DNA from: Podarcis muralis
Taxonomy: Eukaryota
NCBI RefSeq assembly: GCF_964188315.1
Contig: NC_135656.1
Location: 72,416,001 to 72,480,000 of the forward strand
DNA length: 64,000 nucleotides
Reading direction: 5' to 3'
The notes below the pieces were generated by a model that did no database searches, was not told the DNA's origin, and worked only from the letters and a program-made list of their open reading frames with translations. Every line of letters begins with the position of its first letter. Within the stretch, counting starts at the first letter, position 1. The position numbers and the translations under genes are program-made. This document shows, one piece after another, positions 29,036 through 30,917 of this stretch.

Positions 29036-30917
29036 TAATTTCGGTGCCATATGTGAAAACAGTTTCAGACCATGATCTTGAAGTCAGTTGCGTGGAAGTA
29101 AATTCCACTAAAATCCACTGCACATATCAACAAAAAATATGTTTAGAATTGGAGTATTAGCTTTTTGCAACCTTTATATTTGAGGCCAAACTTATGATTA
29201 TGCCGTACAGAATCAGCCATTTGTTGTCCCCCACAGAAAACATTTAAGCAGAGCATTAAACAAAGCACTTGTGGCGCTGCGTGACTGATAAATGAAGGAT
29301 TTATTTCAGACCATTCTGGGCCTCGTAATTCAAAAACAGGCTTAGAAACCACACACTGTCACTACTGTTTCATTTTCTGTTTCACTGTCATTTTCTGATT
29401 CAGAAAATTCAAGGGCCCAGAACATTTGGAAGTCTCAAGTCCAATCAATGTAATTCAGGGGGGAAAGCTTCACCTCCTGAATGTCTGCCTGTTTTGCAGC
29501 TATTAAAGACACAGGAAGCCTGTCGAAAAGCATGCCATAATGCTGTGTTAAAGTTCCAGTGGAGAGCTGAGGGCCAAGACATGCCTTGAGAGACTTCAGG
29601 CTTTAGGGAATACAATGAAAAACATTTTTACTGAGACTGGAGTAAACACAGAAGGAAATAATATAGGAATGTCCACTGTGTTTTGATGGAAAAGGAGGGG
29701 GCCCCTCCAATTTGAGAGCCAATGACCTCCCATTCCCTCATGACGTGTCTATTTTCTCCTCCTCTCCCCCCCCCCCACCCTCCGCCTCCTCCCTAAGGCA
29801 ATTAAAAGGCCAGTTTTTCTAGGAAGAGCTTTGTGGAGTCAGCAGCTGTGAATTCCAGTTCTAGGAATCGTGGCTGCTGGTCTTGAAGAGAAACTTCCTG
29901 GAATCCTCTCTGCCATTCCATGGAACGCAGATGCAAAAGAGCTGTCACAGTGACCTTAAGGAGTTTTAAGAGCCTATAGTGGAGGGGAGGGATAAAAGAG
30001 GCAGAATAGTTTATTTTGTTTTGGTTGTCTGGCTGGCTTAATGATAAAACCAGGGCCAAGCAGTGGCGGGGGTGGGGTGTGTGTGGGTATGTTCTTACTT
30101 CATTTAGCTCTGAAACTCTGAGAGACTGTGGAAACGGAGAAGGAAGATTTAACCCCCGAGGGGTGCAGGACTTTGGAAAGAGGATATCAGGTTAATGGGT
30201 AAAGGTTTTCAGCTATTGATCATAGCTTCCTGAGAGGTTAGCCAGGGTGGCAGACTCTAAGCAGTCAACAGTGCTCTGAGCATGCTGGAAATCCATACAG
30301 ATACACACTTTCCCCTTCAAAAAATCAAGTAGTGGCCACAATTGTTGCAAAAAGAAATAATAATAGCCACAATTACATTGTGTTCCCCTTACATTATCTC
30401 AGTGATCCTCACATCAATACGGCAAGGCTGATCAGTATTACTGCATTGCAAATGAGGACAAGGCATGTGGGGTAGGCCTGAGAGATAGTTAAATCCACCT
30501 AATAAATTCAGGAGTGAGGTGGGTTTTGAAGCGGAAGGGAACGTGTCCGCATGCTACTCATACACTTCAGAAACAGCATCGTAATAAATTCTGAATCTAG
30601 CTTGTTCAGGGCCGAAGCTACAGCCAAAGGAAGATGCTTTTTCTCTCCTTGAATATGGAATTTGCATTGGAAGGGCTATTTCGCTTCCAACCACTAAGTA
30701 ATACTGTACAATTAAACTCTAGTTGACTTTTTTTTACCTTGTACGCCACCAAAATTAATAAATGGCTTTGCTAAATCAAAGACAGTTGAAGTTCTCCTTG
30801 CTTCTGCTCTCTGCTGATCCATCCTGTGTGTTTCATTCGAGTTGTTGGACTGATGTGTCTTTATCCCAGGATCATAGGTGTGTGTGTAACCTTATTTATT
30901 TATTTACTTACTTACTT

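What the first reader, a model, noticed from the sequence alone, without database searches (positions are those of the whole stretch)
29700..29930. Promoter-like distal STAT5 module 23 kb downstream of CISH
Seen: TTCTAGGAA (29817-29825), TTCTAGGAA (29859-29867), TTCCTGGAA (29895-29903) and TTCCATGGAA (29916-29925, N4) within 109 bp. They are preceded by CCAAT (29707, 29719), TGACGT (29741), a C-rich tract (possible G4/i-motif) and ATTAAAAGG (29801), a 9-mer also present beside the proximal promoter pair (61125-61133, minus). This is as dense as the CISH promoter and uses the same motif vocabulary. Inference: a dedicated cytokine-responsive enhancer, or the promoter of an unannotated STAT5-induced lncRNA/eRNA converging on CISH. 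This is the best regulatory candidate in the window.
Basis: partly seen in the sequence, partly recalled or inferred. Interest (0 to 1): 0.75.

Follow-up and report, generated by a model that had tools for sequence, protein, structure and literature searches.

The report
Candidate STAT5 enhancer downstream of CISH
A 230-base stretch 23 kb beyond the end of a lizard's CISH gene carries three perfect STAT5 binding motifs and one near-motif, which is unlikely by chance, so it is a reasonable but unproven candidate for a cytokine-responsive enhancer of a kind already known at mammalian CISH.

Summary
Three TTCYNRGAA sites within 87 bp occurred in 0 of 1000 dinucleotide shuffles of the window. After correcting for the roughly 1.7-fold excess of such sites in real squamate DNA, I estimate a chance probability of 0.002-0.007 per window.

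The sites have unrelated flanks, so they are not a tandem duplication. The segment has no second copy in the window. It lies in a unique, CpG-depleted block (29.2-32 kb) between expressed repeats.

The window is lacertid. CISH lies on the minus strand, and its promoter GAS trio and pair are invariant from lizards to a bird.

The promoter/lncRNA reading has no support. One bulk RNA-seq run and three presumed transcriptome assemblies show no RNA over 29.2-32 kb, there is no CpG island, and there is no ORF with relatives.

The decisive test, conservation of the motifs in other lizards, could not be run. The tools fetch only 10 kb beyond a gene, and no fetched locus reaches the orthologous place.

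Verdict: a plausible STAT5-responsive distal enhancer (about 0.45), untested, of modest interest.

The parts
29817..29825 (.). GAS site 1, TTCTAGGAA (fits the STAT5 consensus TTCYNRGAA)
29859..29867 (.). GAS site 2, TTCTAGGAA; centre 42 bp from site 1
   Evidence: flanks unrelated to those of site 1
29895..29903 (.). GAS site 3, TTCCTGGAA (perfect palindrome; the same 9-mer occurs in the CISH promoter)
29916..29925 (.). N4 GAS-like site TTCCATGGAA, 12 nt after site 3; this spacing falls in the range preferred by STAT5 tetramers
   Evidence: spacing preference of 11-13 and 16 nt from PMC5673064
29801..29809 (+). ATTAAAAGG, a TATA-like 9-mer 7 bp before GAS 1; the same word, inverted, abuts the proximal CISH GAS pair, where it is conserved in 6 of 7 sauropsids
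29756..29793 (+). C/T-rich tract with a C11 run and a CCCCACCCT (CACCC/KLF-Sp type) box; on the minus strand it reads as four G3 runs with 1-nt loops, so it is G-quadruplex-capable
   Evidence: read directly; not folded
29741..29746 (+). TGACGT, a CRE/ATF half-site
29707..29723 (.). two CCAAT boxes 12 bp apart; the second (AGCCAATGA) is a good NF-Y match
   Evidence: the NF-Y match rests on my own knowledge of the consensus
29658..29665 (-). TATATTAT on the minus strand, about 41 bp beyond the CCAAT boxes. On the minus strand the order is GAS cluster, G-rich box, CRE, CCAAT x2, TATA-like, which is a more canonical promoter order than on the plus strand
   Evidence: read directly; no RNA supports a start site here
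29200..32000 (.). unique, CpG-depleted block holding the module, bounded by multi-copy expressed repeats (27091-27430, 27964-28209, 28400-29199, and 32000 onward)

Best explanation
The module is a distal cytokine-responsive enhancer in the 3' flank of CISH. After JAK activation, phosphorylated STAT5 dimers would occupy the three consensus GAS sites. A tetramer could bridge GAS 3 and the GAS-like site 12 nt further on. The adjacent CCAAT (NF-Y), CRE and CACCC/GC boxes would recruit constitutive factors that keep the element accessible. The complex would then loop to the CISH promoter 31 kb away, which carries five deeply conserved GAS sites, and would strengthen the negative-feedback induction of CISH. 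Shown: the motifs, their rarity, their independence from one another, the uniqueness of the sequence, and the identity and conservation of the CISH promoter. Inferred: STAT5 binding, enhancer activity, and CISH as the target gene.
For: The motifs are at the stated places. The cluster is rarer than chance: 0/1000 and 9/1000 shuffles, about 0.002-0.007 after correction for real-DNA site density. In 161 kb of CISH neighbourhoods from six other sauropsids the only cluster of 3 or more GAS sites is the functional promoter trio. Flanks of the three sites are unrelated (p 0.12-1.0) and TRF finds nothing, so the sites arose or were kept independently. There is no second copy in the window, and no multi-copy RNA signal falls on it although the flanks have a strong one. 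CpG o/e of about 0.2 marks old sequence rather than a young transposon. The STAT5-CISH axis is ancient: the GAS trio and pair are invariant from lizard to bird. [quoted passage not shown] The 12-nt spacer fits the tetramer preference (PMC5673064). CACCC and GATA motifs accompany pSTAT5 peaks in erythroid cells (PMC5521770). The element has CCCCACCCT, and a TGATAA lies about 120 bp away.
Against: There are no binding, chromatin or contact data. Conservation is untested because no fetched locus reaches the orthologous place. No comparable cluster exists in the first 10 kb downstream of CISH in Zootoca, Rhineura, Anolis, Elgaria, a snake or a flamingo, so if the element is real it is either further out in those species too or specific to the lineage. 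TTCYNRGAA sites are generally over-represented in 1-38 kb (16 against 4.7 expected), which raises the local chance rate. I estimate about 50 such clusters genome-wide by chance, and most consensus GAS sites in vertebrate genomes are not occupied (the latter from my own knowledge).
Confidence: 0.45

Rival explanations
1. It is a chance motif cluster with no function: three GAS sites and the other short motifs happen to coincide in neutral intergenic DNA.
For: The sequence is CpG-depleted and not transcribed in the runs laid, like its surroundings. Single GAS sites are common in this flank. CCAAT, TGACGT and a 9-mer shared with the promoter are each expected by chance.
Against: The probability is about 0.002-0.007 per window even with realistic site density. 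The motif is the one known to drive the neighbouring gene. No such cluster occurs in 161 kb of comparable sauropsid DNA outside the promoter.
Confidence: 0.3
2. It is the core promoter of an unannotated STAT5-inducible non-coding transcript. The start would be either on the plus strand (ATTAAAAGG acting as TATA, running towards CISH) or, with better motif order, on the minus strand (GAS cluster, GC box, CRE, CCAAT x2, TATATTAT, start near 29635, same direction as CISH).
For: The motif order on the minus strand is that of a classical TATA/CCAAT promoter, with CCAAT boxes about 70-85 bp and TATA about 30 bp before the predicted start. Active enhancers often give eRNA (my own knowledge). A trace of depth (0.36) from a relative's presumed RNA contigs falls in 29400-29599.
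Against: Depth is zero over 29200-32000 in a bulk RNA-seq run (12.8 million reads read) and in two presumed transcriptome assemblies of the species. There is no CpG island. No ORF has relatives or domains and there is no Rfam family. The tissues and stimulation state of the runs are unknown, and I could not lay a positive control such as CISH itself.
Confidence: 0.12
3. It is a relic of an old transposable element, for example a solo LTR whose U3 carried CCAAT, TATA and enhancer motifs. It would be either inert or co-opted.
For: The module is flanked by repeats. LTR U3 regions combine CCAAT, TATA and clustered factor sites, and an AATAAA lies about 360 bp beyond the minus-strand TATA-like box.
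Against: There is no other copy in the window and no match at 90% or more among thousands of repeat-derived RNA contigs. No inverted or direct terminal repeats were found. The scan's own index has no look-alike (a blank of little weight). Genome-wide copy number could not be measured.
Confidence: 0.1

Closest known systems
Distal STAT5-bound CISH enhancer in human CD4 T cells, more than 40 kb downstream of the gene (PMC9839710)
   Same: It lies downstream of CISH at a distance of tens of kb. It is proposed to be STAT5-dependent and to act on the CISH promoter.
   Different: The human element is defined by accessibility, STAT5 binding and looping. The lizard element is defined by sequence motifs only. 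The distance is 23 kb rather than more than 40 kb.
CISH proximal promoter GAS modules (trio at 61406-61449 and pair at 61137-61162 in this window)
   Same: The same GAS words occur (TTCCTGGAA), the sites are similarly dense, and ATTAAAAGG lies next to a GAS site.
   Different: The promoter modules are invariant from lizard to bird and lie in a CpG-rich region. Spacers there are 2, 15 and 8 nt, against 33, 27 and 12 nt here. The 9-mer is inverted. There is no alignable similarity, so the module is not a duplicate of the promoter.
STAT5-bound enhancer clusters or super-enhancers at pan-lineage targets (Cish, Socs1/2, Il2ra; PMC11999048 and the works it cites)
   Same: Multiple GAS-bearing elements are spread over a cytokine-feedback gene's neighbourhood. 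This flank has an excess of GAS sites.
   Different: Super-enhancers are defined by ChIP signal, and none is available here. A second candidate (46562-46694) is conserved in squamates but holds only a weak GAS-like site.

Membership tests
STAT5-responsive GAS enhancer | One or more consensus TTCYNRGAA sites | tested here: met
   Three sites fit the consensus.
STAT5-responsive GAS enhancer | STAT5 occupancy and open, H3K27-acetylated chromatin after cytokine stimulation | not testable with these tools
   No ChIP or ATAC data for this species are reachable.
STAT5-responsive GAS enhancer | GAS sites preserved in related species beyond the neutral expectation | tested here: inconclusive
   Six CISH loci were fetched, but each ends 10 kb past the gene. 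The nearest, Zootoca, stops at window position about 43.3 kb. An ORF-based search and a metagenome pattern scan found nothing.
STAT5-responsive GAS enhancer | Physical contact with and control of a target promoter (CISH) | not testable with these tools
   This needs 4C/Hi-C and a deletion.
STAT5 tetramer site | Two GAS or GAS-like motifs separated by 11-13 or 16 nt | tested here: met
   GAS 3 and the N4 site are separated by 12 nt; the preference is from PMC5673064. This is met at sequence level only.
RNA polymerase II core promoter | Transcripts that start at the element | tested here: not met
   Depth is zero over 29200-32000 and no read starts were seen in four RNA or presumed-RNA runs. Tissue and stimulation state are unknown and there was no positive control.
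RNA polymerase II core promoter | CpG island, or a TATA/CCAAT arrangement at canonical distances | tested here: inconclusive
   There is no CpG island (o/e about 0.2). A TATA-like box and CCAAT boxes stand at canonical distances on the minus strand.
Dispersed repeat / transposable element | Further copies elsewhere | tested here: not met
   There is no copy in the 64-kb window and none among repeat-rich RNA contigs at 90% or more. The whole genome was not searchable.

The most novel reading that the evidence does not exclude
The module is an ancient amniote feedback enhancer, orthologous in position and function to the STAT5-bound element far downstream of human CISH. It doubles as a TATA/CCAAT-type inducible promoter for a non-coding RNA transcribed in the same direction as CISH.
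Probability: 0.07. Interest if true: 0.55.

Novelty: new member of a known kind. Interest (0 to 1): 0.3.

Why it matters
If real, it would show that the distal layer of STAT5 feedback control on CISH, known from human and mouse lymphocytes, also exists in a reptile. It would also give a compact, four-site element for testing how homotypic GAS clusters and STAT5 tetramers work outside mammals. If it is chance, it is a useful reminder that even a locally significant motif cluster next to the 'right' gene needs conservation or binding data.

Tried and rejected
1. Duplicate of the CISH promoter: rejected. There is no alignable similarity, and the 9-mer is inverted and near chance frequency.
2. Tandem duplication creating sites 1 and 2: rejected. 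The flanks are unrelated and TRF finds nothing.
3. A coding gene start: rejected. The 85/129-aa ORF over the cluster has no relatives. Ten ORFs within 6 kb on either side have no Pfam domain above threshold.
4. HEMK1, which from memory is the human downstream neighbour, as host gene: there is no NPPY motif in any frame of the window, nor in the first 10 kb downstream of CISH in the flamingo locus. The neighbouring gene on the low-coordinate side remains unidentified.
5. Known RNA family: none.
6. Reaching the orthologous place in other species: six gene look-ups return only 10-kb flanks and list no neighbouring gene to walk from. A protein-word search with the ORF and a three-GAS pattern scan of metagenome contigs were empty.
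7. The sigma-70/terminator scan is irrelevant to a vertebrate and is ignored.
9. I did not build a joined CISH protein model. Only the last exon was searched, by reference.
10. No human sequence was looked up. The window contains no N.

Full report
OBSERVATION. Reading the window and a pattern search confirm every motif at the stated coordinates.
- TTCTAGGAA at 29817 and 29859, TTCCTGGAA at 29895, and the N4 site TTCCATGGAA at 29916.
- CCAAT at 29707 and 29719, TGACGT at 29741, and a C/T-rich tract at about 29756-29793 with a C11 run.
- ATTAAAAGG at 29801, which recurs inverted at 61125-61133 next to a GAS pair.

LOCUS. The 222-aa ORF at 53063-53731 (minus strand) carries the SH2 and SOCS-box part of CISH. 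Its exon-3 peptide is 98% identical to Zootoca vivipara CISH, and 93-85% identical to other squamates. The window is therefore lacertid, and the cluster lies 23.1 kb beyond the CISH stop codon.

I fetched CISH loci from six species: Zootoca, Rhineura, a flamingo, Anolis sagrei, Elgaria and a colubrid snake. They align collinearly with 43-64 kb of the window.

The promoter alignment shows two GAS modules nearly invariant from lizard to bird. They are a trio, TTCCTGGAA-N2-TTCTTGGAA-N15-TTCCTTGAA, and a pair, TTCCAGGAA-N8-TTCCTGGAA. The pair is followed by TAGATTAAAAGG, and an invariant CTATTTATA lies between the modules. STAT5 control of CISH is therefore ancient in sauropsids. ATTAAAAGG is a conserved word of that promoter.

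IS THE CLUSTER MORE THAN CHANCE? Counts from 1000 dinucleotide-preserving shuffles of the window:

| Event | Shuffles reaching it |
|---|---|
| at least 3 TTCNNNGAA in 90 bp | 9 of 1000 |
| at least 3 TTCYNRGAA in 90 bp | 0 of 1000 |
| at least 4 N3/N4 sites in 110 bp | 2 of 1000 |

Shuffles under-estimate real DNA. Outside the promoters, the six fetched loci hold 33 TTCYNRGAA against 19.6 expected. The window's first 38 kb holds 16 against 4.7 expected. With those densities a Poisson estimate gives about 0.002 per 64 kb, or about 0.007 at the local density.

In the 161 kb of fetched loci the only cluster of three or more sites is the promoter trio. I estimate about 50 such clusters by chance in a genome of about 1.5 Gb (size assumed, not measured). 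On that estimate, one falling within 50 kb of CISH by chance has a probability of a few per thousand.

The 9-mer coincidence adds little. It has 3 copies in the window against 1.2 expected, and it is inverted relative to the promoter copy.

NOT A REPEAT, NOT A DUPLICATION.
- Self-comparison finds no second copy of 29000-31000 in the window.
- The repeat finder and TRF find nothing relevant.
- The 27-33 nt flanks of the three GAS sites are no more alike than shuffled sequence (p 0.12-1.0), so the sites are independent.
- RNA reads and contigs pile up by the tens of thousands on multi-copy repeats at 27091-27430, 27964-28209 and 28400-29199, and weakly from 32000 on. Nothing at 90% identity or more maps to 29200-32000.
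- CpG o/e is 0.18-0.22 there, against 0.65-1.0 in the young retroelements at 40-41.5 and 47-47.75 kb.

The module therefore sits in old, unique sequence. An ancient, diverged transposon origin cannot be excluded without a whole-genome search.

PROMOTER OR ENHANCER? On the plus strand the TATA-like ATTAAAAGG precedes the GAS sites, which is an odd order for a promoter. On the minus strand the order is canonical: GAS cluster, G-rich box, ACGTCA, two inverted CCAAT boxes, then TATATTAT about 41 bp further, which predicts a start near 29635.

The evidence for transcription is negative:
- RNA depth is zero across 29200-32000 in a bulk RNA-seq run of the species (12.8 million reads read) and in two presumed transcriptome assemblies of it. 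A relative's assembly shows only a trace, noted below.
- There is no CpG island.
- There is no ORF with relatives or domains.
- There is no Rfam family.

Two caveats apply. The tissue and stimulation state of the runs are unknown. The single read-laying run left no room for a positive control on CISH itself. A trace (0.36 mean depth) from a relative's contigs at 29400-29599 is unexplained. I take the promoter reading as unsupported, though not excluded for an inducible eRNA.

CONSERVATION. The decisive test could not be run. Gene look-ups return at most 10 kb beyond a gene and listed no neighbouring gene to walk from. Zootoca ends at window position about 43.3 kb and Rhineura at about 46.5 kb. 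No similarity to 29-31 kb and no GAS cluster occurs in any 10-kb downstream flank. A word search with the ORF spanning the cluster and a three-GAS pattern scan of metagenome contigs were empty.

No HemK-type NPPY motif occurs in any frame of the window, and none in the first 10 kb of the flamingo flank. The next gene on that side is outside the window or was not recognised.

WHAT IS KNOWN.
- Cish is among the pan-lineage genes associated with STAT5 enhancer clusters in mouse (PMC11999048).
- STAT5 tetramers prefer GAS pairs spaced by 11-13 or 16 nt (PMC5673064). GAS 3 and the N4 site are 12 nt apart.
- In erythroid cells pSTAT5 peaks are accompanied by GATA and CACCC motifs (PMC5521770). The module has CCCCACCCT, and a TGATAA lies about 120 bp away.

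A distal STAT5 enhancer of CISH is thus a known kind of element. A reptilian one would be a new member of that kind.

MECHANISM PROPOSED (inferred). Cytokine-activated STAT5 dimers bind the three consensus sites, possibly with a tetramer on site 3 and the N4 site. NF-Y, CREB/ATF and KLF/Sp factors on the adjoining boxes keep the element competent. The element loops to the CISH promoter 31 kb away and boosts feedback induction. Confidence is about 0.45.

RIVALS.
- Chance cluster: 0.30.
- Inducible non-coding promoter: 0.12.
- Old transposon relic: 0.10.

RULES FOLLOWED. No human sequence was consulted. The window holds no N.

Noticed in passing
window 46562-46694: A conserved non-coding block 6.4 kb beyond the CISH stop codon. 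It is 84% identical over 131 bp to Rhineura and also alignable to Elgaria. It holds a GAS-like site, TTCAAAGAA here and TTCAAGGAA in Rhineura. On conservation it is a better-supported distal regulatory candidate than the finding itself.
   Followed up: partly
window 50620-50899: A block 2.2-2.4 kb beyond the CISH stop codon that aligns at 72-76% in Anolis, Elgaria and a snake; about 59 bp of it also aligns at 80% in a flamingo. It is either the end of a long 3' UTR or a conserved downstream element. It has no GAS site.
   Followed up: no
window 61060-61470 (minus strand); alignment A1: The CISH promoter GAS trio and pair, the adjoining TAGATTAAAAGG..GCAAACAAAAGATTAC and a CTATTTATA box are nearly invariant across five squamates and a bird.
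   Followed up: yes
window 1-38000: TTCYNRGAA sites are over-represented: 16 against 4.7 expected from shuffles, and still 13 without the cluster. There are none in 38-53 kb. Real squamate DNA has about 1.7 times the shuffle expectation, so the residual excess is mild (about 13 against 8). The sites have unrelated flanks.
   Followed up: partly
window 27091-27430, 27964-28209, 28400-29199: Multi-copy repeats with very high depth and sharp common boundaries in RNA runs of this species and a relative. They are probably SINE-like elements carried in many transcripts.
   Followed up: no
window 61450-61800: A GC- and CpG-rich stretch with two GCCAATCAG boxes and TGACGTC, directly upstream of and divergent from the CISH promoter. 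It is probably the plus-strand promoter of the neighbouring gene (MAPKAPK3 by mammalian synteny, from memory).
   Followed up: no
window 40000-41500 and 47000-47750: Segments with CpG o/e of 0.65-1.0 in otherwise CpG-poor DNA. They coincide with retroelement ORF fragments and are probably young insertions.
   Followed up: no
window 29400-29599: A trace (mean depth 0.36) from presumed RNA contigs of a related species, just beyond the predicted minus-strand start site. It is too weak to interpret.
   Followed up: no
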